Source of the DNA: Camelus ferus
Lineage: Eukaryota
Assembly: GCF_009834535.1 (NCBI RefSeq)
Contig: NC_045704.1
Location: 11,780,001-11,844,000, forward strand
Direction: 5' to 3'
Length of the DNA: 64,000 nt
Position numbers and translations under genes: made by a program. Numbering within the stretch: the stretch's first letter is position 1; every line of letters begins with the position of its first letter. A model generated the notes under the pieces. That model saw only the letters and a program-made list of their open reading frames with translations, had not been told where the DNA came from and searched no databases. Positions 5,849 to 62,014 of this stretch are shown here, piece by piece.

Positions 5849-5988
5849 NNNNNNNNNNNNNNNNNNNNNNNNNNNNNNNNNNNNNNNNNNNNNNNNNNNN
5901 NNNNNNNNNNNNNNNNNNNNNNNNNNNNNNNNNNNNNNNNNNNNNNNNNNNNNNNNNNNNNNNNNNNNNNNNNNNNNNNNNNNNNNNN
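5849..5988. other. Assembly gap (Ns) covering the LIM2 start codon
   Basis: 140 N directly before the in-frame HQGLW codons. Other gaps: 27676-27812, 38649-38817, 52689-52817, 59131-59421, 61508-61748, 61807-61993. Confidence 0.95.
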
Positions 5989-13100: not shown

Positions 13101-14313
13101 AAGATGGCAGATGGGCTCTGGGCTATGACTCCTGTCACCACACGCCCACGGCCCCGACTTCCTGAAGTCTGTCTGGCTGCTCCTCACAGGAGCCACGTCC
13201 ACCACCATTTTTGTGATGGTGCTTTAGCTGCTCATGACCTGGATCCTCTTCTGGGAGCCTGTCCTCATAGGTATGTTTTCAGGAGTGGCCAGTTACCCCC
13301 TCGGGGAGGATCTGGGTGAGGGATGAGGGCCTGCAATCTAGAGTCTCCAACCAAAGAGGACCCAGCCTATTGGATCTCGCAGGGCCAGTCTCCCTGGTGT
13401 GGGAGGAGGTCTGGAGCGTCCATCCCTGACACCCTTTACTCCCCATCCCGACTCCCTGACCACAGAAACCCTGATCTTGGTGATAGCCCACCAAGCTGAA
13501 GGCCCCGCTTAAAGCTGAGCTATCTGTGAACTCATTTATCAGAGGAGGATGTGGGCACGTCTTCCCCTCCACAAACTCTTAGAGCTTGTGATCACTGTTT
13601 ATCTGCCCAGAGCACAAGCTACAAGCATGGATCTGGGAGTCTGAGGGCCCCTGCCCTCAAAACCTGGAGTCTAAGCCTCTGACTCCTTCCTCTTTCAGCC
13701 CCAGGCATCCTGATCTCTTGCCCCCTCCTTTGGTGGAGACCATAGAGTTGAGACCCCCATCTCCTAGAATGGAAGGTTTCAGAACCCACACACAGGAAAG
13801 CATGATGCATCCCCCACTGTCCCCTCTGGCCACACCCCCCCTCCTATTTCAATCACACCCTGGCCTCACCACATCTCACCTCCGGGCCCCCCAAGCCTCT
13901 CTCTCACCTCTTCCAGGAAGCCCCCTCTGCCGCCAAGGGCTCCTAGGGCTTCTATATAGACAGAGAGGCAAGTTCCAACCACCATCCAAACCACTGACGA
14001 GGTGACATCTTCAGTGCCCTCCCCCCAACACACACGCTGTGAGGGGAACCTCAGGGAGGGGGGGTGGGGTAGATGCAACCCAGGAAGGGAGGATATGTGA
14101 CAAGAGTCAGCTGCTAGGAACTGGGTAAAGCTAAACCAGCCCGGTCTTAAGGCTCTCCGGCCCCCAGGCCACCCCGGCTGCTTGCTGGTTTCTTTCTTGA
14201 GCTCAGAGGACCTAGGAGTCCAGGGGGCACAGCCTCCTCCTCTCTCAGAGACCCAGAAGTCTGGATTACCAGCCTCTTGATCACTCAGGACCCAGAAACC
14301 CCGCGCTCACCCG

Positions 14314-15079
14314 ATGGAGCCCTGTCGGTCCCTGGCCCTGCTGACTGGCTCCCTGGGCCTGATGTCCATCTTGGTTGCTCTGAGCACGAATTTCTGGTTC
14401 GTGGCCGAGGGGCCCACCTCTTCATCTCATTCGGGCCTCTGGCCAAAGGGGCATCAGGACTCAATAGCAGGTAAGGGGGAGCCAACTCTCTCGGGGTGGG
14501 GAACAGCCAGGGCTGACAGGCACTCAGAGGTCCTGTGTCTAAGCAGGCTACATCCACGTGACACAGAGCTTCTGCATTCTGGCCACCCTGTGGGGCCTGA
14601 TCTCTGTGAGCTTCCTGGTGATGTCCTGCATCCCCTCACTGTCTGCCCCTGGACGTGGCCCCCTGGTCTCCACCTTCACAGCCTTTGCCGCAGGTAAGGG
14701 CTCCGGGCTGCACCTGGGGCATTGGGACCTGGGGAGTTTCTGCAGGGGGGCTGAGCTGTCTCTCTCATCTCCGCCCCCAGCCCTCTCCTTGATGGTGGCC
14801 ATGGTGGTCTATACTATCGAGCGGTGGAACCAGCCTGGACACCCCCAGATCCAGTCCTTCTTCTCCTGGTCCTTCTACCTGGGCTGGGTTTCAACTGTCC
14901 TCTTTCTGTGTGCAGGTGACTGCTGCCCTGGGAGTTTGGGGGGAGGGGGGAGGGGGTCCACTGGGGGCTCTGAGGGAGCAGGGCAGGGGCAAGGGCTCTA
15001 ACTTCTCTCTGCCACCCCAGGCGGCCTGAGTCTGGGTGCTCACTGCGGGGCGCACCGGCCCGGCTATGAGAGCGTGTGA
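14314..15079 (+). CDS. NKG7: Natural killer cell granule protein 7, 4 exons, 165 aa
   Basis: Exons 14314-14470, 14547-14693, 14781-14915, 15021-15079 (498 nt). Protein MEPCRSLALLTGSLGLMSILVALSTNFW...HSGLWP...FFSWSFYLGWVS...HRPGYESV*, ending in a C-terminal YxxPhi motif. AATAAA at 15481-15486. Confidence 0.97.
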
Positions 15080-17155
15080 ACCGTGTGGATGGCTTTGGGG
15101 CCCTGCCCTCTGAAGGCACCATCAGGAGCCGCGGGAAGCTCTGGTTCTCCTCCCAGTCCTCACTCCCAGCCTCTGCAGCCTCCTTCCTTTGTGTCTTCGT
15201 TCACTCCACAAAAATTTGCTGGGACCCAGTTATTCCGAGGTTAATGCAGCCCCAGCAGAAGCTGACGACACGCCAGCTCCACAGTGGGAGACCCTGGGCA
15301 CCCAGAGAGTGTTCCCACCCAGGGTGGGGGCCGGGGTGGGCTCGGGCTCAGCCCCAGGGCTCTCTCCCCCCTCCCCCTGGCCTTTGTCTCTCCCCTTTGT
15401 CTTTTTATCCCTTTTATTCTCGCCCCTCTCTTCTTTTGTCACACTTGCCTTCACTCTTAGCCCTCCTTGCTCATTTCATTAATAAATTCACTCCTGCAGT
15501 TGGCTTTCCCCGAGTGCATCCTTTCTGAGGGGGCCTCCCACTGGGGGTGCTGTGGCGGGTCAGACCGGACCCTGCCCACCAGGGGCTGCAAGTCCGGTGG
15601 GGGCAGGCAGAGCCCAGGGCGGGCACAGCAGGAGGGCTGGCTGTGTCGTGGGGGTGGGGTGGGGTGGGGGGTGGAGGTGAGCTCTCTGAGGAGACAGAGA
15701 ACTTCTCAAGGGCCAAAGGAAGGTAATGCAGGTAGTGGGACCCTAAGGCAGAGGCGTGGAGAGGGTGGAAGTTCTCAGAGGATGGAGAACAGTGCTTTGC
15801 AGCTGAATGGAGAATGTGGAGCTGGTGGAAAATGAGGATGGAGAGACAGGTGGCAGTCAGTGCCTCTAACTCAACAGTTGTCTGTCTCTGTCTCTGTCTC
15901 TGTCTCTGGTGGGTGATAGGGAGCTAAGAGAAGAGGGTGAACAGGGGAGGGACAGCATCTTCTCTGAGCACCAGAAAGCTCCCTCTGGGGCACATGGGGG
16001 AAGCCAGAGGTGAGAGGAGATCTTGGCCACACAACAGGTGGGACGTAAGACAGGACAAGGCTGGGCTGGAGCCAGGGCATGAGATGGAATGGAGGAAAGG
16101 AGCCAGAAAGATTCAGGGGGTGGGAGGAACCGGACTCAGGGATCCAAGGGCTTTGTGGAGTGAGGGGCAGGAAGAGGGCAAGGAGAGTGCCCAGGGGGTC
16201 TGGTCCAACTAACTGAGTGGGATGATGTGGTCATTTCTGGTTTTGGTGGAAGATGCTGAGATCAACTGGGATATGGTTGCGGGCTAGGGTCTGGGAGAGG
16301 GCCGGGAGCATGTGAGGATTTAAGGCTAAGGCTCAGGAGGACACCTGGGCTGGAGATGGCATTTGGGATGCTCTCAGAGCATTGGTGGTCACTGGAGCTG
16401 TGGGAGTGTGGAAGCTCCCCCGAAAAGAAGATACAGAATGGAGCCTCCGAGAGAACCCACACTGGGCGGTGGCGGGAGTAGGAGCAGGAGGCTGCAGGGG
16501 AGCCTAGGAGGGCACAGTCAAAGAGCTGGGGACAGGAGAACTTGGGGAGGGTCAAGGGAAGAGAAGTTTCTAGAAGGACATGGGCTACCGTGTCATCACC
16601 TTCAGACGCCCCTAGTCCTGCGGTTTGACTCTGAGCTGTTACTTTGCTAGAAGAGCTGCCCCGTGTGCGTGCGTGTGTGTATGGGTGGGTGGTTATCTCT
16701 TTAAACAGCCACGGATTCTGGAATTCCTACTGCCTCACAGAGACCTGGTTTCCCTTCCCCCACCCCTCTGGGCTCTGTCTGAGAAGCCCTGGGAGCTGGA
16801 ATGGGTCACTTAGGTGAGTGTGTGCAGAGATGAGGGGGGTGGGGGGGTGGGGGAGTGGAGGAGGGGTGTGGCACTGGACAGGCCAAAGGCATGTGAGGGA
16901 TGGAGGTTTCTGGAAGACAAGGAAACTCCTAAGCAGTGATGCCTGAGGGGAAAGGAGGGCTTGGGTCTGAGAGGGGCCTGTGGGGGATCCCCATAAGTAG
17001 GGGCCAGAGGCAGGGTGCTGGGATAGCCATCTGGGATATGGGGGGACATATGGAAGAGGGTTTCAGGGACTTGAAGGAATGGGGCGAGGGGCCTGGGGGT
17101 GGGAGAGGTGTTGGCCAATCCTGCATGTGTGGTCCTTGGCAGCAGCCTCCCTGGC

Positions 17156-18584
17156 ATGGGGGTGAAGCAGAACCTTCAGAGTGGGGGCACCTTGCTGGGC
17201 TTCTTGGCTACCAGCCTCACGATTCTGTCCACCACCACCAACTACTGGTTCCGTTACTCTGGGGGGCCACAGTGGCCTGTGGCAGGAGTGTGGCCTGTGG
17301 CAGGAGTGTAACAGTGGCATGTAACCCAACATCCCCGGCCAGAGTGAGGCCCGGCCGCCCCAGTGTCAGACCTCCACTGGACAGACAGCCCCCAGACAGA
17401 CCGATCACAGCTAGCCCCCTCATCTGACACAACTGCGGGGCACATCCTGCGGCGCCCCCAAATCTACCCTTCCATCTAAGTTCCAGCTACCCCTCCGTGA
17501 CCAAGGCCACCATGATCTCCCACTTTGGCATCTGCTTCCCTGTTGCAACATTAACGGGCCCTCATGATGTAACTGCCAAGTCCCCATCCAAACCCCTGAC
17601 TCTGCTGCCAGCCCAGAACTGGCGGGTGGGGTTGGTGGCCAGGGAAGGTGCCAGCGGGGCTGATGCGACCCGCTCTCCCCCAGCCATGCTGGCGGTGACT
17701 GGGGCGTTCATGGTGCTAGCGGCGGGCTCCGGCATCGTGGGCTTGGTGATGGGGCTGCGGATTCTGTGCCAAGAGGGCGACCCACGGGGCCAGACCACTA
17801 GCGCCATCTTCTTCCTCTGCGGTGAGACGGCAGCGGGCCGCCAGGCATAGGGTGGGCCTGGAGTTTGGAGGGGCAGGGGCCCAGGGGTCGCGACTTGAGG
17901 CATGGGTATGGGAGCCGGGAGCTGGGGCTGGAGACCGAGAGGATACGGCGGGGATCAGAAGGACAGCTCTGGTGGTGGAGGAGCTAGAGAGGCGGGGCTA
18001 GGGGCGGGGCCGGGGAGACGGGGTAGAGCCCGGACGGGGTGGGCTCGAAGGGCGTGGCCTGGGGCGGTGGGCGAGGCCAGGGTGGGGCCTGGGTGCAGCC
18101 TCTTGGCCACGCTCACCCGGGGGGTGGGCGGGGCCCAGGCCTGCTGCTGCTGATCGCCTTGACAGGCTGCTATATAGTGAAGAATATGTGGAAAAACGAC
18201 GTCGTCTTCTCCTGGTCCTATTTTTTGGGGTGGCTGACTTTATCCTTCTCTGTTCTCGCGGGTAATCTGGACAGCGGAAGAGGGTGGAAGAGACGGTCCC
18301 GAAGAACACCCCCTCCCTGCAGAGACTCCTAGCCACTTCCCGGAAACTCCACAGTGACTTCCCAGGGACTCCCCAACACATTCCACTCCGGGCTCCCGGG
18401 GACCCGGCAGAAAAGCACTTGGAGCCCCAAACTCCAGTCCCTGGGGCCCTCCGGGTCATCCGCCCCGGGACCTACCCTCCTCCACCTGCCCTCCATTCTC
18501 CTCCCGCCAGGCTTCTGCTTTCTGCTGGCAGACATGATCGTGCAGAGCACGGATGCCATCAGTGAATTTCCAGTGTGCTTGTAA
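17156..18584 (+). pseudogene. CLDND2: Claudin domain-containing 2, disrupted in exon 1 (frameshift, 18-nt duplication, premature stop)
   Basis: Exons 17156-17343, 17684-17821, 18139-18261, 18511-18584 match recalled CLDND2 (MGVKQNLQSGG...TNYW; GHSGLWQEC; RGQTTSA; FSWSYFLGW; DMIVQSTDAISEFPVCL*). The ATG frame ends at TAA 17309-17311 after the G6 run at 17261-17266. The ancestral frame has TAA at 17322-17324. AATAAA at 18602-18607. Confidence 0.85.
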
Positions 18585-19348
18585 CCGCAGGTGCTTGGCA
18601 GAATAAAGGAACGGCTTCCACCGCAGCGGCTCCATGTGACTTTCTGGGGGACCTGAGGACGCAGATACGGGGGTACTTGGAGGCTCAGGGAGGGCGTAAG
18701 GACACGAACCTACAGGGAACATTGTAGACATGGGGGGGACACGGGCGTGGTAGAGACTCGGATATAGAGAGGACAAGGGACATGTATTTGGAGGGGACGG
18801 GGACATGGGGATAGTGGAATCAGGGGACATGGGCGCATAGAGAGGATATAGGGACACAGACACGGAGGAAAAGTGGAGACAAGGACGGGGGAGGACAGAT
18901 ATGGAGGAACGTAGAGGCGCGATCATAGAGGGGACGAGGAACACGGGCTTGGAGAGAATGAGGTAGGGGGAATGGGACACGGGTTGGGCACTAGGGGAGA
19001 GGGTAGACCCGAAGGCATTGGGAAAAGTTTAGGAGGTCTTTTCTGAACTCCTCTCCAGGAACGCGTCCCTCCCTCGCGGGACCTTTCCCCCAGTTCCTGG
19101 CCACACCCCCTTCACAATGTCCTTTTTTCCGGGTTCCGCCTCTCTCCCAGGGATCTGCTCCTCATTGGCCCGCATCTACTTGCCCCACCTCTCTCCCCTC
19201 CGGCCTCCCGATTGGTCCTTCTGGGCGGGCGGGGCGGGCACCGCGGCTGTTGACTGGCTGGCGGCGCGGAACGCAGGCGCAGAGAAGGATAGGGGGGCGG
19301 GGCTACCAGCCCGGGAGGCCGAAGGCGAGGACTCGCCGCCGCAGGAAG

Positions 19349-30364
<11,016 letters not shown>

Positions 30365-33802: not shown

Positions 33803-41420
<7,618 letters not shown>

Positions 41421-45216: not shown

Positions 45217-48200
45217 CTACATCCTCCACCACAGCCAGCCCAGGGCGGAGAGGAGGATCAGGGGCCCTGGGGGCCTCGGGGCCGAGTTCTCCAGGGATCC
45301 TGGGCCTGGGGGGAGAAAGAGGGTCAGGGGAGGAGGCCCGGAGAGGGGAAACCCCATGTGTGTCTCTCCCAGGAGTCTTGTCTCTGCTTTGGTCTCCGAG
45401 GGTCTTGTCTGAGGCTGCCTCCTAGGGAACTTTCTGGGCTTCCCACTCAGTGTTTCAGTCTTAGCATCTGTGATCCCTGTTCCTTCTGCCCGCAGACCTC
45501 CTCCCGCAGATCTTGGTAGGGCTGGCTTCCTCTGACCATTGAGATCTCAGTTCAGATATCAGCCCCTCCAGGAAGCTTTCTCTGATGATCTGATCTAATG
45601 CTACCACCCCCAATCCTATTACTTATTTTTTTCGTAGCCCTTATGGATATTTAAAATTATTTTTGCTTAGTTACGTGTTTATAGATTTGTTTGCTTTTAA
45701 TTTTATTTGTGTCTACTTGTTTATTGCTGTTCTACTGCTGCTGGACAGCAAGCTCTGCGAGTCCCCAGAGCTCGCCTCTTTTGTGCATTGCTGGGTCCCT
45801 AGCACCCAACGCCCAGCCCTAGGTGGGCGCTCAGTGAATATCGATAGAGGGATAGGCTTCTTGCTCAGTCGCACTGCTTCTGAGTCTCAGCACGCGTATC
45901 TTTCCTAAGTTCGAGGACATTCTCGGGGCGGTCTCTGCATCTCCACCTCCCTGGCCCCGCCCATTCAGCTCCCGCCCCGCCCACGCCTCCCCGGCCCCGC
46001 CCCGCCCGCCGCTCAGGGACGCACGCAGGAGCCGCATGGAGGCGCTGGACATTCCCAGCCGGTTGGCTGCGCGACACGTGTAGTTGCCGTAATGCCGGGC
46101 GCTCACGTTGGCGAAGAGAAGCATCGAGCGGGTGCGCTCCGTCTGCACCTTCAGGCCCTCGGCCGTGCCACTGCTCAGCCTGCCAGGGACCCGGGTCAGG
46201 GACCAGGCCGCAGGACCCGGCCTGGGACCCACTCGAGGCGGAGAGACCAGCCCTGCACCCGCATCCGCGACCATCAGGCTCCCCAGTTCCCAATTCCCTG
46301 AAGACCCTGCATTCTGTCCCCTACCCCAGCGATCTCTAGCCTCCTGTTCTAGCTCCCCATGGATCACGGGCCACTCCCACCGACGCCCTTCTCCAGGCAC
46401 CGCAGTCCCTCAGGGACATTGGACTCTCCCAGTGTGTGACCCCCCAACCTCTAGGTCTAGGGGTTCCCAGGCCACGCTGGACCCGGGTCCCAAGGGTCCC
46501 CTAAAGCTTCTCGGCCAGATCCTCAACAGCAACCCCTGACCCCAGACCTTCTTCCTGAATAGCCGGAGGAGACTGGGCTCCAACATTTATCATCTTGGGA
46601 CCCCAAATTTTTAGTAAGTCACCCCAGTCTCCCGGTGCCCAGTGGACCCCAAGACCTAGAAACTAGACCCCCAGGTCTCAGGACCCAGTACTCTGCTCCC
46701 TCTGCCCCATTCCCTGCAGTCCAAAGAACTGAGGGCCCCACCACCACCATCCCCACGGCCCGCCCCGGTGCTGTCCTCACAGTCGGTCATCCTTGTACCA
46801 CTGGAAATCCGCTGGAGGCACGGCCATGGCTTCGCAGCGCAGGAGGGCGGCCCGGCCTAGGGCCGTTCGGGCGCTGGTCACGTCCGTGATGGTCGGAGGA
46901 TCTGGAGGGGGACCAGGGTCACCGAATTCTCCTAGCCCAGTGGGGACGAAAAGGTCTCGCCCCCAGTCCCCTCCTCCGTCTTTCCCAGGAGTCCAGATCT
47001 CCAACCCCCTCCTTAGGCCAAACCCTTTCCTCCCTTAGACCCACCCCACCCCCTTCCTTCTCTCTCATATCCTTCATCCCCAGGGACCCAGGGCCCCCCC
47101 CCTTTGGTGCCCAGTGCCCGGGGGTGGGATGGAGGGGGCCTCACAGTTGACTGTAACCAGCACGCGGCGACTGTCGGGTGCAGAGTTCACCCCGTTGTGA
47201 GTCACGCACTCGTATTCTCCGGCTTGGCCCCGTTGGATGTCGGAAATCTCAAGGATCTCCCCCTCGGAGGTGAAGCCGTCTGTTGAGGGAGGGAAGGGGA
47301 GGGGCAGGGCCAGACACAAACACTTAACACGGGACAACACGGGCACAACACGGACACACATCAGCGGGGCGGACACCGCAGGGCCTGGAGTGCCCGGCTC
47401 AGTAGGAGTGGGGAGGGGGCTAGCGGGGCCCAGGATCTCCTGGTAGGGGTGGGGCAGAGTGTGGGGATCTGGGGCCAAGTAACTAGAACCCAGTGGTGAG
47501 GGTCATAGAACTTGGGGAGCTCAGGGGATTCAGTGATCTGGGAGTCCATAACTCAGATCATGGGGCTCACAGGACCCAGTGGGGAGGATCCTAGGATCTT
47601 GAAGCTCAGAAAGATTCAGAAAGATCCAGAAAATACAGACCCAATGGGGGAGGCTCTAGAGTTCTGTGATCTAGCTCTTGGGGTCCAAGGAATCAGGATC
47701 TGGTGACTGGGGACAGCAATCCAGATATCTGGGGTCTTATGCCAGAGCACTGGCTCAGATGACCCTTCGAGACTCAGAACATCCAGGGAACCAGGATATC
47801 AAGACCAGGACCTTGGGGCTTACGTGAACTGGTAGGCGAGGATCCAGGGATCTGAAACCTAGTTATTGGGTTCTGGGTCCCAGAGGATCTAGTGATTGGC
47901 ACGGTTGGTCTCCAAAGACCCTGTGAGTGAGGATTTAGGGATCTGGGAACTAGTGGTGGAGATCCAGGTAAAAGGGGCGATGGATGATGGCACTGTTTTG
48001 GGACAGCTGTGGTTCTCAGCTCTACCATAAGAATTATTCAAAGGGCTTACTAAAACAGATTGTGGTGGTGGTGGTGGGGTTCTGACTCATTAAGCTGGGG
48101 ATGGGCCCAAGATGTGCATTTCCGGCAGGTTTCCAGGTGATGCCAGTCTGGGGACCACACTTTGAGAACTGCTGCTCTAAAGGCATCCAGTAGAGGTGTA

Positions 48201-50982
48201 GTGATGTGAGCAGGAGAGGAGACCGTGGGCCAGGGCTGTAGGCTCTGGCCACCTAGTAGGTAGGGGTCTGAGTCCAGGAGAATCCTGTGAACTGGTGGGG
48301 AAGAGACTGGAGATACTGGGGACAGGGATGCGTGGCAAGCTGGGATCTCGCAGGCGATTTGGAGGAAATCATCCAGGCCTGGGATGGCAAGTGGGGACGG
48401 CTCTAAGGTTCTGGGGGGCTGCGGGTGAAATAACAGGACCAGGGTGGGAGGAGAAAACCCGTCGTCACCAGAGTTGGGGAGGGATCAAGAGAGAGGGATA
48501 ACTGGGGGCCCAGCTGGTGGAGAAGGGGAAGAGGCTCTCGGCCAGGGGTGGGTCCTCACCTCGGAGCTGCCTCCAGGTGACCGTGGGCTCCGGCCGCCCC
48601 ACAGCCAGGCAGAGCAGGTTCACATTGCTCCCCTCATTCACCGTCACGGGCGAAGAGATATTCACGATGCGGGCGGGGACTGCAGGGAAGGTGAGTGAGA
48701 GGCTGGGTGTGGGCCCCGGGACCCAGGATCCAGGCCCCAGCCCCTCCTCCCCCCGACCCGGGAGTCCCCGGCACTTCCTGTCTTTCTGTAAGATTCCCTC
48801 TGTGTCCTCCCTTCCCTCTGGGCCTGGCTCCTTCTCCAGCTGCTGCTCCTGTGTTTTCCTCTCTCTTTCTCAGTCTCTTGTCTTTCTCCACCTTCCTCCT
48901 AACTTGGTTTCTCTCTTCTATCTTCTGGCCTGAAGTCCTCCTTTCCAGTCTCTATTTGCATTTATGTATTAATTATTATTTTTTTAAAAAATCACTAAAA
49001 TTAATTTATTTAATTAATGCTTATATTCTGCTTCTGGGTGTAAGCTCACCCTGTTCTAAGTGTTTTATAAAGATTAACTTGTTAAACCACCCCTCTGGGG
49101 TAGACATTGCTATAGTCATCAATTCTAACACAGGGGGGTGTTCTCCACCTCGACCCCCTGTCCCATTTGAAGATTTCTCCCATCAGGAAGGCCTTACGAG
49201 GTAGGACACCAGAATTTAATAGGCAGGTTTTTCCCCCTCTTCCAGCAGGGTATAAAATAAAGGTGCCCCTTCCAACTGACGATGTCTTGGATTTGATACA
49301 TGACAACGTCATCTCTGTTTTGCAGATGAGGCGTCTGAGTCAGTCCGGCTTGCTCAAGGTCCCTCAGCCGGTGGGTGGTAGCGGCGAGGTTGGAAACCAG
49401 GGGATCTGGCTCCCAAGTCAGGGCTGGTCGTGGCCCTGCTGGGCTGTCTCTGGGGTCCTGTCTCTCCAAGTGCTCCCTGTCCTCCAGACCACCACTGATG
49501 CCATGCGAAGCAGCCCCCTGCCCCCTCCATGGATCTCTCCAGCCCCACCTCTCCTGCTCTGAATTCTGCTGCATCTGATCTGGCACGTGCTGTTCCTTTT
49601 CTGGGACCAGCCCTGCACCCAGCTGAAGGTCTCAGCTCAGACATTATGTCTGGGAAGCCACCTCTCCTTGAAAAGACACCTCCAGAGGGGCAGCGACAGC
49701 CTGCCTGGCTCCTTCTCTGTCCCCAGTGCGTGGAGCAAAATGCCTGCACATAGTAGGTGCTCAATAAACAGGGCTGAGAGAATGGATGCGGTCTTCCTCC
49801 GCATGCCCCCTCGCCCCCATCGCTCTCCTGCACTAGAAGCTGTCCATGACTTCCCCTTCCTCTGCTTGGCTGGAATCTGTGAGGGAGGATGTGTGTCTGC
49901 CTTCCCACGGCTGCATCCCTGGGATCTGCGAGGACATGAGGGTCCCCTCTCCCCTGCATCCGCCACCTGCTTTCCCCTCCGTGACTCTCTGGGGCCCCAG
50001 CCGAGGGCTCACCGTGGACGATGAGGTAGACCTGAGTGGTGTACGGCTGGTGGCGGGTCTGGAAGGAGCAGGTGTAGAGGCCCTCATCGCCCAGCCCCAC
50101 CTGGGTGATGAGGATGGAGAACTCCTCCGGCGTGTTGGTGAGCAGCCGCACCCGTGGGTCGCTGGTCCAGCGATCGTTGCCCGCGTACAGGATGTTGGAG
50201 CGGTTCAGCCAGGCCACTCGGGTCACATGCTCATCGATGAAGCAGCTGGCGGGGAGGACAAGGGCAGGGCGGTTCTTCCCTCCCCCACACCTGCCTGGCC
50301 CTCCAGGGTCCCCCATCTCAGGGGCTTGGAGTTGGGGGAGAGGAAGGCCTGTCGCATCTCCAGTTCCCATGGCAGTCCTCGAAGGCAGGGGTGACTGTGC
50401 CCACTTTCCAGGCGGGCAAACTGAACCTCAGGGATGGACAGTTGTGAGCTCGTGTACAACAGAATAGCAGCTGATGGTTATTGAGTGATTGTTGTGTGTC
50501 AGAGAAGAGAGGGGAGAGAAAGTCTGGGGGAGAGGGACAGAGATGCAGAGTGATGAGGAACCCAGAGACAGAAGGACAGAGACCCGGGGGTGGGGGGGGG
50601 ACAGGGACCCAGAGTGGGGAGGGGCCGAGCCTGGGACAACGTGATCCTGGCTCTCACAGTGGGCCACGCTGTCTGAGCTCAGGGTGTGTGCATAGACTTG
50701 AATCTTCACAACAACTCACTCGGTGGTGACCATTCTCCTGCCCATTTGACAGATGGGGACACTGAGGCCCATGGGTGGAGGTGGGCCCAGAGTTTCTGCC
50801 CCAATGGCCTCTCTCCGGATGGGGGAGGTATGGGCTGTGCCTGCAAGTCAGGACCATTTACCCCTAAGAAAGGTGAGGGGGCAGCCCCCTCTGAGTCCCG
50901 TACCTGAGGGTGGCGTTGTCACCTTCACACACCGTGTAGTTGTCTGCTGGCGAGCTGAACTCCAGGCTCTGGGAGAGCAGCC
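45217..50982 (-). CDS. IGLON5: IgLON family member 5 (three Ig domains, GPI-anchor signal); exons 2-8 visible, exon 1 in N gap
   Basis: Minus-strand exons 50904-50982, 50013-50245, 48560-48679, 47145-47279, 46781-46901, 46025-46179, 45217-45305 ([43 protein letters not shown]...[10 protein letters not shown]). The missing ~79-nt coding exon 1 is expected in GC-rich gap 59131-59421. Minus-strand AATAAA at 43687-43692. Confidence 0.96.
48020..48185. mobile_element. MER5A-like hAT-Charlie remnant
   Basis: ATGTGCATTTC..GCAGGTTTCCAGGTGATGC...GGGACCACACTTTGAGAACTGCTGCTCTA. Confidence 0.7.
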
Positions 50983-51759: not shown

Positions 51760-53579
51760 AATCTACAGATAGGTACACATATGAAGATACACACGTATAC
51801 ACGCACAGATACACACGTAGACGGGCGCACACACATGTATTCAGACTCATGGGTATGTAGGTACCTATATACACAGACACATGTACGTGTGTAACAGACA
51901 TGTGCACTCTGTACACACATTATAGGCCTGAATTCAGAAATACATGGAAAGACACGCAGCGCCAGCGGCTCGCAGATACTCAACACACACATATGTCTAC
52001 ACAGACCTACAGACACACGTATGCAAGCACGCGCAGGAACACAGATGTCTGCGTACATCCACGCAGACACACGTCTATCACAGACGCACAGTCTGCCCTT
52101 GGGCCTGGTGTACAGCCGCACGCAAGCCTCCGCAGACCCCCGCGTCTACGCAGACACCCCGGTGTGCCCATGCCCAGCGGGGCACGCTCTGGCGGGCGCC
52201 TGCCCACGCCTGCCTGCGCACCCCAGCGCCTGGCAGAGCCCCCACCCCCACCCATTCATCTCTCTGTGGACCGTGGCCAGCGGCTGGACCGGGGCCAGGG
52301 AGTGGGGGCTGGGCACGCAGAGGCAGCGGATGGAGACAGCATCAGGAGGGGGAGAGGCGGCGGAGGCCAGGTGACCTTGGGCGCCTGGGGAGGGAGGGCC
52401 CCATCCAGGGCTGCCCTGGTGCCCCGCCCCAGGATGAGGAGCTAATTAATCTAATGAATTAATTGCCCGTGCCGCCCCAATGACTCCCGGAGGCCCTCTC
52501 CATCAGCAGCTCCACAGGACGGGGCGGGGGCAGAGCCAGTGCAGTGGGCTCGCCAGGCCCTGGGGTTGGGGGCCGGGCCCTGCAGCCGGGCCAGAGTCCC
52601 TCCTGCGCTTTGAAGAGCCCTGGAGGTGGGGAAGGAACTCGCTCTCCCTGCGCTGTGCGGAGGGGGGATGACACACACACCCCGGTAANNNNNNNNNNNN
52701 NNNNNNNNNNNNNNNNNNNNNNNNNNNNNNNNNNNNNNNNNNNNNNNNNNNNNNNNNNNNNNNNNNNNNNNNNNNNNNNNNNNNNNNNNNNNNNNNNNNN
52801 NNNNNNNNNNNNNNNNNATGCACTGAGCCAGCCCCAGGGTCAGGAAATAGTCCCACAAGCAGTCACAGGAACCGGGTAGGGCCTGCTCGGAGGGACAGGA
52901 GCACACACTCTGAGGCGCACAGCCGGAGACACACACCCAGCAGAAGGTCAGTTAGAAAGGACAGCTCTCTCCCAGAAGCACTCCTATCAGCCACAGGAGG
53001 GGCAGCTCCAGGCCCAGCCGCCATTGCATCCTGACTCGACCCACCATATATAACCGATCCACACGGTTACACGGACACCAGCAGCCCCCCACGCGCAGGT
53101 GCAAAGTCTACACACGGTTACGCGCGCGCACACACACGTTGGCCTAATCAGTCACAGTGACACTACCAGCCCAGGAGCCATACTCGTCCCCACCCCCTCC
53201 CTCTGGAAAGTCATGCAGGAAGCTCCAGGTTGTGTAATGGAACAGTGACAGGGGCAGAGCCTCTCAAATACAAAGGCGCCGCCGCCCTGGGCCAAGAATC
53301 CGGCGCATGCAGGCATGCTGTCACCGACGATCAGATCACACACAGCCATAGCCACATTCACACACACATACACACACGCCCCACAGTATTTGTCATACTC
53401 TTGGTCACACACATCCCAGACCAAGGTGTCTCCATCTCTGCACCACTGACACTTGGGGCCGGGTGATTCTACTTTGTGGGGTCGTCTTGTGCAGTGTTAG
53501 GATGTTTGGCAGCATCCATGGCCTCCACCCTCTAGATGCCAGTAGCTCCCCCAACCCAAAATGCCTCTGGACGGGGGTG

Positions 53580-58839: not shown

Positions 58840-59600
58840 TCCCCGACCCGGAGCCGCAGCCTCCCGCCCCCAGGCCGGGACCAGGGGTCCACGACCCTCT
58901 CTCTCCTGCCCGGAGAAGCAGACCTCCGCCCCTAGGCCCAGGCTCAGGCCCCAGGACGGGGACCCCCGCCCCCGGGCATGGATCCAGATGTCCGAGTTCC
59001 CCCTTCCCAGGTGGGGGATGCGGCCCCCGCCCCCGGGCCCAGACCTCGGCGACCGGGGGCCTCCCCTTCTCCGCCCTGAGATGCAGCCCCCCTCACCGCC
59101 CCCAATCCCCGCCCGGGACCCTGGAGTCCANNNNNNNNNNNNNNNNNNNNNNNNNNNNNNNNNNNNNNNNNNNNNNNNNNNNNNNNNNNNNNNNNNNNNN
59201 NNNNNNNNNNNNNNNNNNNNNNNNNNNNNNNNNNNNNNNNNNNNNNNNNNNNNNNNNNNNNNNNNNNNNNNNNNNNNNNNNNNNNNNNNNNNNNNNNNNN
59301 NNNNNNNNNNNNNNNNNNNNNNNNNNNNNNNNNNNNNNNNNNNNNNNNNNNNNNNNNNNNNNNNNNNNNNNNNNNNNNNNNNNNNNNNNNNNNNNNNNNN
59401 NNNNNNNNNNNNNNNNNNNNNACCCGGGGAGGGGGCGGCGCTGACGGGCAGGAAGGCCGACCAATCAGGGGAGGCGGGGGGCCGGGGAGGCGGGGCCGAG
59501 GGGGGGTTGCTTGTTGGAGGGAGAGGCCTTTGTTACTGCGGCCCGGCCCCTACCTCCTCCCATCCCGGGCGTCCCCACGGCTTCCCACCTCGGATCCCTA
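58840..59600 (-). promoter_or_regulatory. IGLON5 CpG-island promoter and exon 1 region (partly N gap)
   Basis: GC/CpG-rich flanks on both sides of gap 59131-59421; CCAATCAG at 59461 and GC boxes on the upstream side. Confidence 0.65.
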
Positions 59601-60849: not shown

Positions 60850-61806
60850 TGGAGGATTAAGAAGTACAAATTATCAGATATAAAATAAGCTACAAGGATG
60901 TATTGTACAACATGGGGAATATAGCCAATATATTATAACTATACCCTAACCTTTAAAAATCGTGGATCACTATATTATATACCTGTAACATATAATATTG
61001 TACATGAATTATACTTCAGTTTAAAAAAATATGACATTGTAAAATAAAGTTAAAAAAAAAGTAACCCCCACTCCTAATGCCTACCTCTGTTTTGTTTTCT
61101 CCATAGCCTTTACCATTCCCTTATTTTCTGTGTTCACTTGTTTATTTCCTGCCACCTCCCTTTCCCTTCATTCACTACTTCCAGAATGTGCACTTTGCTA
61201 GGGCAGGGTTTTGTGTTTTTGTTTGTCTGTTTGTTTAATTGAGATAGAGTTGATTTACAATACTATATTAGTTTAAGTTATACAACATAGTGAGTCAGAA
61301 TTTTATTTATACTTCATTTAAAGTTATAAAACATTGGCTATATTTCCTGTGCTGTATGATGTATCCTTGTAGCTTATTTACTTTATACACAGTGGCTTGT
61401 ACCTCTCAGTCCTCTATCTCTATCCTGCCCTCCCCCTTCCCTCTCCCCACTGGTAACCACTAGTTTGTTTTCTGTGTCTGTGAGTCTGTTTCTGTTTTAT
61501 TATATTCNNNNNNNNNNNNNNNNNNNNNNNNNNNNNNNNNNNNNNNNNNNNNNNNNNNNNNNNNNNNNNNNNNNNNNNNNNNNNNNNNNNNNNNNNNNNN
61601 NNNNNNNNNNNNNNNNNNNNNNNNNNNNNNNNNNNNNNNNNNNNNNNNNNNNNNNNNNNNNNNNNNNNNNNNNNNNNNNNNNNNNNNNNNNNNNNNNNNN
61701 NNNNNNNNNNNNNNNNNNNNNNNNNNNNNNNNNNNNNNNNNNNNNNNNAAAATAATGCTGCTATGAATTTTGAGATGCATGTATCTTTTTGAATTAGTAG
61801 GGTATT
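60850..61806. mobile_element. Two oppositely oriented LINE-1 3' fragments (~60850-61030 plus; ~61240-61806 minus, with N gap)
   Basis: ATAAAATAAGCTACAAGGATGTATTGTACAACATGGGGAATATAGCCAAT on plus; TTGGCTATATTTCCTGTGCTGTA...TCCTTGTAGCTTATTT on minus. Confidence 0.75.
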
Positions 61807-62014
61807 NNNNNNNNNNNNNNNNNNNNNNNNNNNNNNNNNNNNNNNNNNNNNNNNNNNNNNNNNNNNNNNNNNNNNNNNNNNNNNNNNNNNNNNNNNNNNN
61901 NNNNNNNNNNNNNNNNNNNNNNNNNNNNNNNNNNNNNNNNNNNNNNNNNNNNNNNNNNNNNNNNNNNNNNNNNNNNNNNNNNNNNNNNNNNNNGATAGCT
62001 TCCACTAAACTAGG

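What the first reader, a model, noticed from the sequence alone, without database searches (positions are those of the whole stretch)
17156..17343. CLDND2 appears inactivated by three lesions in exon 1
(1) A G6 run at 17261-17266 shifts the frame by +1 just before GHSGLW, giving a 51-aa product ending at TAA 17309-17311. (2) An 18-nt tandem duplication (TGGCCTGTGGCAGGAGTG x2, 17273-17308) repeats GLWQEC. (3) The ancestral frame has TAA at 17322-17324 where the recalled human protein has Cys, and the next Cys codon reads GGC. Correcting the homopolymer would not rescue the gene, so sequencing error alone is unlikely. This looks like lineage-specific gene loss in a cluster whose neighbours are intact.
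Basis: partly seen in the sequence, partly recalled or inferred. Interest (0 to 1): 0.7.

Follow-up and report, generated by a model that had tools for sequence, protein, structure and literature searches.

The report
Dead CLDND2 gene in camels
The camel copy of CLDND2, a little-studied claudin-like membrane protein gene, is a true dead gene; its oldest break is shared with alpaca, so the whole camel family lost it long ago, which is an ordinary, though apparently unreported, gene loss.

Summary
They are a G6 run at 17261-17266, a perfect 18-nt tandem duplication at 17273-17308, and a TAA at 17322-17324 in place of the first conserved loop cysteine. The second cysteine codon reads GGC (17337-17339).

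They are not assembly errors. The stretch occurs word-for-word in contigs of at least 15 runs from 6 studies and 2 organism labels.

The window is 100% identical over 6 kb to a Camelus ferus assembly. Alignment with dromedary, a second two-humped camel assembly, alpaca, pig, two whales and horse orders the events:
- TAA and Cys-to-Gly are shared by alpaca and all camels, so they are the oldest and family-wide.
- The G6 frameshift is in all Camelus but not alpaca.
- The 18-nt duplication is a polymorphism of two-humped camels.
- Alpaca has its own second stop in exon 2.
- One camel assembly has a 3-bp deletion that removes the TAA but keeps the frameshift.

Camel-alpaca exon divergence equals non-exon divergence (2.4% vs 2.5%). 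In whales the exons are 2.5-fold slower. The codon-model test for relaxed selection was not significant (p = 0.14). NKG7 and ETFB next door match their annotated proteins, and the dead gene is still transcribed.

Verdict: a real unitary pseudogene, a new example of a known kind and of modest interest. This scan has already noted other camelid-wide gene losses on other DNA of this genome.

The parts
16785..16813 (+). 3' end of an upstream non-coding (5' UTR) exon, with donor GT at 16814
   Evidence: RNA contig L001 joins 16813 to 17143 across a GT-AG intron
17143..17343 (+). CLDND2 coding exon 1 (ATG at 17156, donor GT at 17344) carrying all the lesions
   Evidence: aligned to exon 1 of pig, whale and horse CLDND2
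17261..17266 (+). G6 run, a +1 frameshift (G5 in alpaca and all outgroups); Camelus-specific
17273..17308 (+). Perfect 18-nt tandem duplication that repeats GLWQEC; polymorphic in two-humped camels
   Evidence: TRF; absent in L001, L002, L009, L012
17309..17311 (+). TAA that ends the 51-aa product of the shifted frame
17322..17324 (+). TAA in the ancestral frame in place of the first conserved loop-1 cysteine (TGC in outgroups); shared with alpaca, so the oldest disabling lesion
17337..17339 (+). GGC (Gly) in place of the second conserved loop-1 cysteine (TGC in outgroups); shared with alpaca
17684..17821 (+). Exon 2, open in Camelus with AG/GT splice sites kept; alpaca has CAA to TAA at the codon aligned to 17778-17780
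18139..18261 (+). Exon 3, open, with a camelid-wide in-frame 3-nt insertion at 18166-18168
18511..18584 (+). Exon 4 with stop TAA at 18582-18584; AATAAA at 18602-18607
18275..18510 (+). Intron-3 stretch used as exon after an alternative acceptor (AG at 18273-18274) in the RNA contig, which skips exon 3
   Evidence: L001 joins 17821 to 18275. A porpoise isoform (P0018) has the same architecture

Best explanation
This is the syntenic, single-copy CLDND2 locus (NKG7 - CLDND2 - ETFB) of a two-humped camel, and it is a unitary pseudogene. The first disabling events happened in the common ancestor of camels and alpaca. The codon for the first of the two conserved extracellular-loop-1 cysteines became TAA, and the second became glycine. 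After that the sequence drifted. The Camelus stem gained a one-base G insertion (a frameshift). Alpaca gained a second stop in exon 2. Within two-humped camels an 18-nt slippage duplication and a 3-bp deletion now segregate. The promoter and splice signals still work, so the locus is transcribed, but no full four-helix claudin-like protein can be made. Shown here: the lesions, how they are shared among species, their presence in many individuals, equal exon and non-exon divergence, and transcription. Inferred: that no functional truncated product exists, and the timing in years.
For: The lesions are at the stated coordinates. The outgroup state is G5, a single copy, TGC and TGC in pig, sperm whale, right whale and horse. 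The window is 100% identical over 6000 bases to L011, from the assembly that carries the NKG7 protein named Camelus ferus. TAA and GGC are shared by alpaca L008, dromedary L009, L011, L012, L001 and L002. G6 is found only in Camelus. The duplication is found only in the window and L011. Alpaca has a private TAA in exon 2 plus Leu-to-Pro, Phe-to-Tyr and Leu-to-Arg changes. Many individuals carry the lesions: 8 of 8 words in at least 15 runs from 6 studies, and contig X12 is identical across 17186-17727. Camel-alpaca exon divergence is 12/504, against 26/1026 for non-exon sequence (OR 0.94). The same comparison gives OR 0.38 (p=0.004) between two whales and OR 0.42 (p=3e-7) between pig and whale. 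Of the 121 residues invariant in the five non-camelids, 9 are changed in all four camelid sequences, including both cysteines, and 6 more in only some of them. No named camelid CLDND2 protein turned up among 5.8 billion proteins searched with exon 2. The 2013 C. ferus annotation skips the gene and fuses NKG7 to ETFB. No alternative donor restores the phase.
Against: Exons 2-4 are still open in Camelus, with canonical splice sites. My own branch codon model gives a camelid omega of 0.47 against a background of 0.26. That rise is not significant (p=0.14), and omega=1 for the camelid stem plus crown is weakly rejected (p=0.04). This is expected if part of the long stem was still under constraint, but it is not proof of neutrality. 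The gene tables of the fetched assemblies list a 167- or 173-residue product at this place, so some annotation pipeline models it as coding, presumably with corrections. The alpaca state rests on a single assembly. Raw-read depth was too low to add much.
Confidence: 0.9

Rival explanations
1. The lesions are sequencing or assembly artefacts of this one assembly, for example a homopolymer miscount or a collapsed or expanded repeat.
For: A G-run length error is a common artefact. The duplication is missing from several other assemblies.
Against: G6 is present in four independent Camelus assemblies and in one RNA contig. TAA and GGC are present in all camelid sequences except L002, where a 3-bp deletion has removed the TAA. 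The exact 110-nt stretch, duplication included, is held by contigs of at least 15 runs from 6 studies. It also lies in a 542-nt contig of a 2015 run.
Confidence: 0.02
2. The gene still makes a useful product in Camelus. This could be an N-terminally truncated protein started at the Met that opens exon 2 (helices 2-4), or a regulatory RNA.
For: Exons 2-4 are open and their splice sites are intact in three Camelus sequences. The locus is transcribed. Crown omega is 0.45 rather than 1, but it rests on about 10 substitutions. NCBI predicts exon-2-start isoforms in porpoise (P0018).
Against: Alpaca has a stop inside exon 2, plus Leu-to-Pro and Leu-to-Arg changes that by the known four-helix layout fall in or near helices 2 and 3. 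Exon divergence equals non-exon divergence within camelids. A downstream start would sit behind a 51-codon upstream frame, and from general knowledge of nonsense-mediated decay the premature stop in exon 1 should mark the spliced mRNA for decay (inference). A protein lacking helix 1 and loop 1 would not be a claudin-type four-helix protein.
Confidence: 0.06
3. A working allele still segregates in camel populations, making this a polymorphic pseudogene.
For: Two of the lesions are polymorphic: the 18-nt duplication, and the 3-bp deletion in L002 that removes the TAA.
Against: Every Camelus haplotype seen (window/L011, L012, L009, L001, L002) keeps both G6 and the Cys-to-Gly change. L002 loses the stop only by also deleting a codon. 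The lesions shared with alpaca predate the genus.
Confidence: 0.02

Closest known systems
CLDND2 (claudin domain-containing protein 2) orthologues of other laurasiatherian mammals, e.g. pig XP_013850516.2 and sperm whale XP_007113212.1
   Same: The position is the same, between NKG7 and ETFB on the same strand, and the four-exon layout and splice phases match. The conceptual translation is 77-84% identical over 166 aligned codons.
   Different: The camelid copy has a stop at the first loop cysteine and glycine at the second. Camelus also carries a frameshift, with or without a 6-codon duplication. All camelids have one extra codon in exon 3.
Other camelid-wide unitary pseudogenes noted earlier by this scan on the same genome (TNFRSF6B/DcR3, ECI1)
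   Same: The pattern is the same: a syntenic dead gene whose main breaks are shared by camel and alpaca, according to those unchecked notes.
   Different: The gene and pathway differ. The function of CLDND2 is essentially unknown, so no physiological reading is available.
Claudin / PMP22 / EMP family (Pfam PF00822), with the loop-1 signature W-GLW-C-C
   Same: Orthologues carry PF00822. The camel sequence still encodes the W...GLW part of the signature.
   Different: Both signature cysteines are gone. From general knowledge of claudins, these form the loop-1 disulfide.

Membership tests
CLDND2 orthologue (locus identity) | Conserved synteny: located between NKG7 and ETFB on the same strand | tested here: met
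   NKG7 exons lie at 14314-15076 and the ETFB start near 19370 in the window. Pig, whale, horse, alpaca and camel loci show the same order.
CLDND2 orthologue (locus identity) | Sequence similarity of the exons to named CLDND2 proteins | tested here: met
   Exon 2 is 84-92% identical to named CLDND2 proteins, with E-values down to 1e-16. The full conceptual alignment is 77-84% identical.
Unitary pseudogene (lineage-specific gene loss) | Disabling mutations in the only, syntenic copy, confirmed in independent data | tested here: met
   The stop and frameshift are seen in 4 Camelus assemblies, 1 RNA contig and many run contigs.
Unitary pseudogene (lineage-specific gene loss) | Lesions shared by related species, plus independent later lesions | tested here: met
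   TAA and Cys-to-Gly are shared with alpaca. G6 is Camelus-only. The exon-2 TAA is alpaca-only.
Unitary pseudogene (lineage-specific gene loss) | Relaxed selection on the remaining coding sequence | tested here: inconclusive
   Exon and non-exon divergence are equal within camelids, unlike whales and pig. However, the branch-model rise in omega from 0.26 to 0.47 is not significant, p=0.14.
Unitary pseudogene (lineage-specific gene loss) | No intact paralogue or second copy elsewhere in the genome | not testable with these tools
   No whole-genome search of camel assemblies is offered. The protein search with exon 2 found no other camelid copy, which is only indirect evidence.
Claudin/PMP22 family protein (PF00822), functional member | Intact loop-1 W-GLW-C-C signature and four helices in one reading frame | tested here: not met
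   Both cysteines are lost, and the frame is broken between helix 1 and helix 2.

The most novel reading that the evidence does not exclude
The camelid loss of CLDND2, a gene sitting beside the cytotoxic-granule gene NKG7, was not mere drift but is tied to a camelid-specific change in cytotoxic-lymphocyte or reproductive-tract biology. Alternatively, the still-transcribed remnant has been kept as a regulatory RNA or a truncated three-helix protein in Camelus.
Probability: 0.06. Interest if true: 0.5.

Novelty: new member of a known kind. Interest (0 to 1): 0.3.

Why it matters
CLDND2 has no established function. Only 40 papers in the searchable library mention it, and none has it in the title or abstract. 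A natural knockout that a whole mammalian family has carried since before camels and alpaca split shows the gene is dispensable in large mammals. It also gives a comparison group for anyone who studies the gene. On the practical side, the locus is a clean teaching case of lesion ordering: a shared stop, then a genus-level frameshift, then segregating indels. It also warns annotators, because the gene tables of current assemblies list a 167- or 173-residue product here. The 18-nt duplication and the 3-bp deletion are easy PCR-size markers within two-humped camels. Beyond that, it is an ordinary gene loss.

Tried and rejected
- **Second read-laying run.** It gave only 6 raw reads, about 1x depth, and none crossed 17254-17289. 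Nothing was laid for X10 and X13. Read-level confirmation therefore rests on Logan contigs and word shares.
- **Exact look-up of the 51-aa product.** It found nothing.
- **Homology search with the 51-aa product.** It found one protein, P0028, which led to L002.
- **Searches for GCA_029266115, JARIFU01 and SRR33129663 in papers.** These found nothing, so the species of L001 and L002 is inferred only from their sequence. They carry the two-humped-camel state at the sites where dromedary differs.
- **First codon-model script.** It timed out. The rewritten version ran.
- **Rescue by an alternative splice donor.** Rejected. The only phase-compatible GT, after 17252, lies before the G run, matches the consensus poorly, and would delete the whole GLW-C-C loop.
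- **Stop-codon recoding.** Rejected, because TAA is not a selenocysteine codon.
- **Dating the loss from omega.** I left this out because the estimate was too weak to support it.

Full report
**Observation**

- ATG is at 17156, and a run of six G lies at 17261-17266.
- In the ATG frame the product is 51 aa and ends at TAA 17309-17311.
- Tandem Repeats Finder reports a period-18 array at 17272-17309 with 2.1 copies and 100% matches. This is the duplicated unit at 17273-17308.
- The frame that continues with ...GHSGLWQEC reads GLWQEC twice, then N-S-G-M, then TAA at 17322-17324.
- The second cysteine position reads GGC at 17337-17339.
- That frame, not the ATG frame, joins exon 2 in phase at the donor after 17343.

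**Gene structure**

The remaining exons are exon 2 (17684-17821), exon 3 (18139-18261) and exon 4 (18511-18584, stop TAA). All have AG/GT borders, and AATAAA lies at 18602-18607. A search with exon 2 hit named CLDND2 proteins of many mammals at 84-92% identity, and many of them carry Pfam PF00822. NKG7 lies upstream at 14314-15076, and ETFB starts about 0.8 kb downstream. This is the expected order and is also seen in pig, whales, horse, alpaca and camels. Every window segment that aligns to the annotated NKG7 and ETFB proteins is open. A spliced NKG7 mRNA contig also exists (L013).

**Whose genome**

An NKG7 search returned a cluster holding proteins named Camelus ferus/bactrianus, Camelus dromedarius and Vicugna pacos. 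I fetched their loci with 8 kb flanks and compared them with the window over 14001-20000:
- L011 (GCA_009834535.1): 100% identical over all 6000 bases.
- L012, a second two-humped camel assembly (GCA_048773025.1): 99.4%.
- L009, dromedary (GCA_036321535.1): 98.9%.
- L008, alpaca (GCA_048564905.1): 96.0%.

The window is therefore a wild or Bactrian-type camel. Earlier notes of this scan had already called the genome a camel. I used them only as a lead.

**Are the lesions real?**

The 110-nt stretch 17236-17345 contains G6, the duplication and the TAA. All 8 of its sampled words are held by Logan contigs of at least 15 runs, from two organism labels and 6 studies. Over 16900-18700, eight runs hold 100% of 179 words. 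One contig of a 2015 run spans 17186-17727 with no mismatch or gap. G6 is also present in three further assemblies and one RNA contig. An assembly artefact is excluded. Raw reads added little, with only 6 reads and none across 17254-17289.

**Order of events**

The exon-1 alignment covers the window, L011, L012, dromedary, alpaca, L001 (an RNA contig of SRR33129663), L002 (GCA_029266115.1), pig, sperm whale, right whale, horse and one unnamed mammal. All non-camelids read G5, one 18-nt copy, and ATC-TGC-TCC ... CCC-TGC-CAG.

| Lesion | Where it is found | Reading |
|---|---|---|
| ATG-TAA-CCC ... CCC-GGC-CAG (stop at first cysteine, glycine at second) | All camelids, alpaca included; in L002 a later 3-bp deletion leaves TAC | Oldest; predates the camel-alpaca split |
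| In-frame 3-nt insertion in exon 3 (18166-18168) | All camelids | Also old; explains a 167-codon frame against 166 elsewhere |
| G6 frameshift | Every Camelus sequence; alpaca has G5 | Arose on the Camelus stem |
| 18-nt duplication | Window and L011 and many run contigs; absent from dromedary, L012, L001 and L002 | Youngest; polymorphic |
| CAA to TAA in exon 2, plus Leu-to-Pro, Phe-to-Tyr and Leu-to-Arg | Alpaca only | Independent later decay |
| 3-bp deletion turning TAACCC into TAC | L002 only | Removes the stop, but G6 and the glycine remain |

Five RNA runs hold 6 of the 8 words. That is the share expected if the two words at the duplication junction are missing. Two of these runs carry the same organism label as runs that hold all 8 words. 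The duplication therefore segregates within two-humped camels.

**Selection**

I aligned 166 codons in the ancestral frame, with camelid-only insertions removed and stops masked. I then fitted my own GY94/F3x4 branch models.
- One-ratio omega is 0.30.
- In the two-ratio model, background omega is 0.255 and camelid omega is 0.465 (stem 0.47, crown 0.45).
- The rise is not significant (LRT 2.2, p=0.14).
- Omega=1 for the camelid stem plus crown is weakly rejected (p=0.04).

This fits a long stem that was constrained for part of its length, but it proves nothing.

A simpler contrast is clearer:

| Comparison | Exon divergence | Non-exon divergence | Odds ratio | p |
|---|---|---|---|---|
| Camel vs alpaca | 12/504 (2.38%) | 26/1026 (2.53%) | 0.94 | 1.0 |
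| Sperm whale vs right whale | 2.0% | 5.1% | 0.38 | 0.004 |
| Pig vs right whale | 8.6% | 18.4% | 0.42 | 3e-7 |

The camelid ratio differs from the pig-whale ratio at p=0.04, and from the whale-whale ratio at p=0.07. Within camelids the exons have therefore changed as fast as the introns. Of 121 residues invariant in the five non-camelids, 9 are changed in all four camelid sequences, including both cysteines. Six more are changed in only some of them.

**Rescue routes**

No GT in exon 1 downstream of the G run gives the phase needed to join exon 2. The only phase-compatible GT, after 17252, is a poor donor and would remove the GLW-C-C loop. A protein started at the Met that opens exon 2 would lack helix 1 and loop 1, and alpaca has a stop in that exon.

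The gene tables of the fetched assemblies list a product of 167 residues in alpaca, dromedary and L012, and 173 residues in L011. These lengths equal the read-through frame without and with the duplication. Some annotation therefore models the locus as coding, presumably with corrections. I could not see the product. The 2013 C. ferus annotation instead fuses NKG7 to ETFB and skips CLDND2.

**Transcription**

RNA contig L001 shows the following:
- A non-coding upstream exon ending at 16813 is spliced to 17143.
- Intron 1 is retained.
- Exon 2 is joined to an alternative acceptor at 18275, which skips exon 3.

A porpoise isoform (P0018) has the same exon-2-to-intron-3 architecture, so this splice form is probably not a camel-specific aberration. 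Three of the five RNA runs that hold the stretch are labelled as reproductive-system samples.

**Comparison with what is known**

This is a standard unitary pseudogene. Searches for CLDND2 with 'camel' gave 0 papers, and with 'pseudogene' gave 2 irrelevant ones. CLDND2 alone appears in only 40 papers and never in a title or abstract. The loss seems unreported in the searchable literature. Large automated gene-loss catalogues may list it, but I could not check them. This scan has already recorded other camelid-wide losses (TNFRSF6B, ECI1) on other pieces of this genome.

**Verdict**

This is a new member of a known kind, of modest interest, because the gene's function is unknown and no phenotype can be attached to the loss.

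Noticed in passing
window 16785-16813, 17143-17821, 18275-18539 (locus L001): A camel RNA contig shows an upstream non-coding CLDND2 exon, retention of intron 1, and a join from exon 2 to an alternative acceptor inside intron 3 that skips exon 3. A porpoise RefSeq isoform (P0018) has the same architecture, so this looks like a conserved alternative form.
   Followed up: partly
L002:181-390 (GCA_029266115.1, JARIFU010017799.1), aligned to window 17322-17327: This camel assembly has a 3-bp deletion that turns TAACCC into TAC. It removes the ancient in-frame stop while keeping the G6 frameshift and the Cys-to-Gly change. It is a secondary indel segregating in a dead gene. The species of this assembly could not be looked up.
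   Followed up: partly
window 14314-15076 and 24903-30361 (protein P0193, EPY88816.1): The 2013 Camelus ferus annotation holds a 378-aa protein named ETFB that is a fusion of NKG7 exons 1-3 with ETFB exons. It jumps over CLDND2 and is likely a gene-model artefact.
   Followed up: partly
cluster of P0015: Several baleen-whale proteins in the CLDND2 cluster (Balaenoptera acutorostrata, B. ricei, Eschrichtius robustus) are named 'protein NKG7' by their source although they cluster with CLDND2. This looks like name transfer from the neighbouring gene.
   Followed up: no
window 18166-18168: An in-frame 3-nt insertion (an extra Cys codon in the third helix region) is shared by all four camelid sequences and absent from pig, whales and horse.
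   Followed up: yes
window 5849-5988, 27676-27812, 38649-38817, 52689-52817, 59131-59421, 61508-61748, 61807-61993: There are seven runs of N in the window. None is near CLDND2, and they were left as they are.
   Followed up: no
window 45831-50370, minus strand: Long open frames here encode IgLON5-like immunoglobulin domains, and VSIG10L-like exons lie at 33847-37986 on the plus strand. The window therefore spans NKG7, CLDND2, ETFB, VSIG10L and IGLON5 in the order I recall for human, which I did not check with tools.
   Followed up: no
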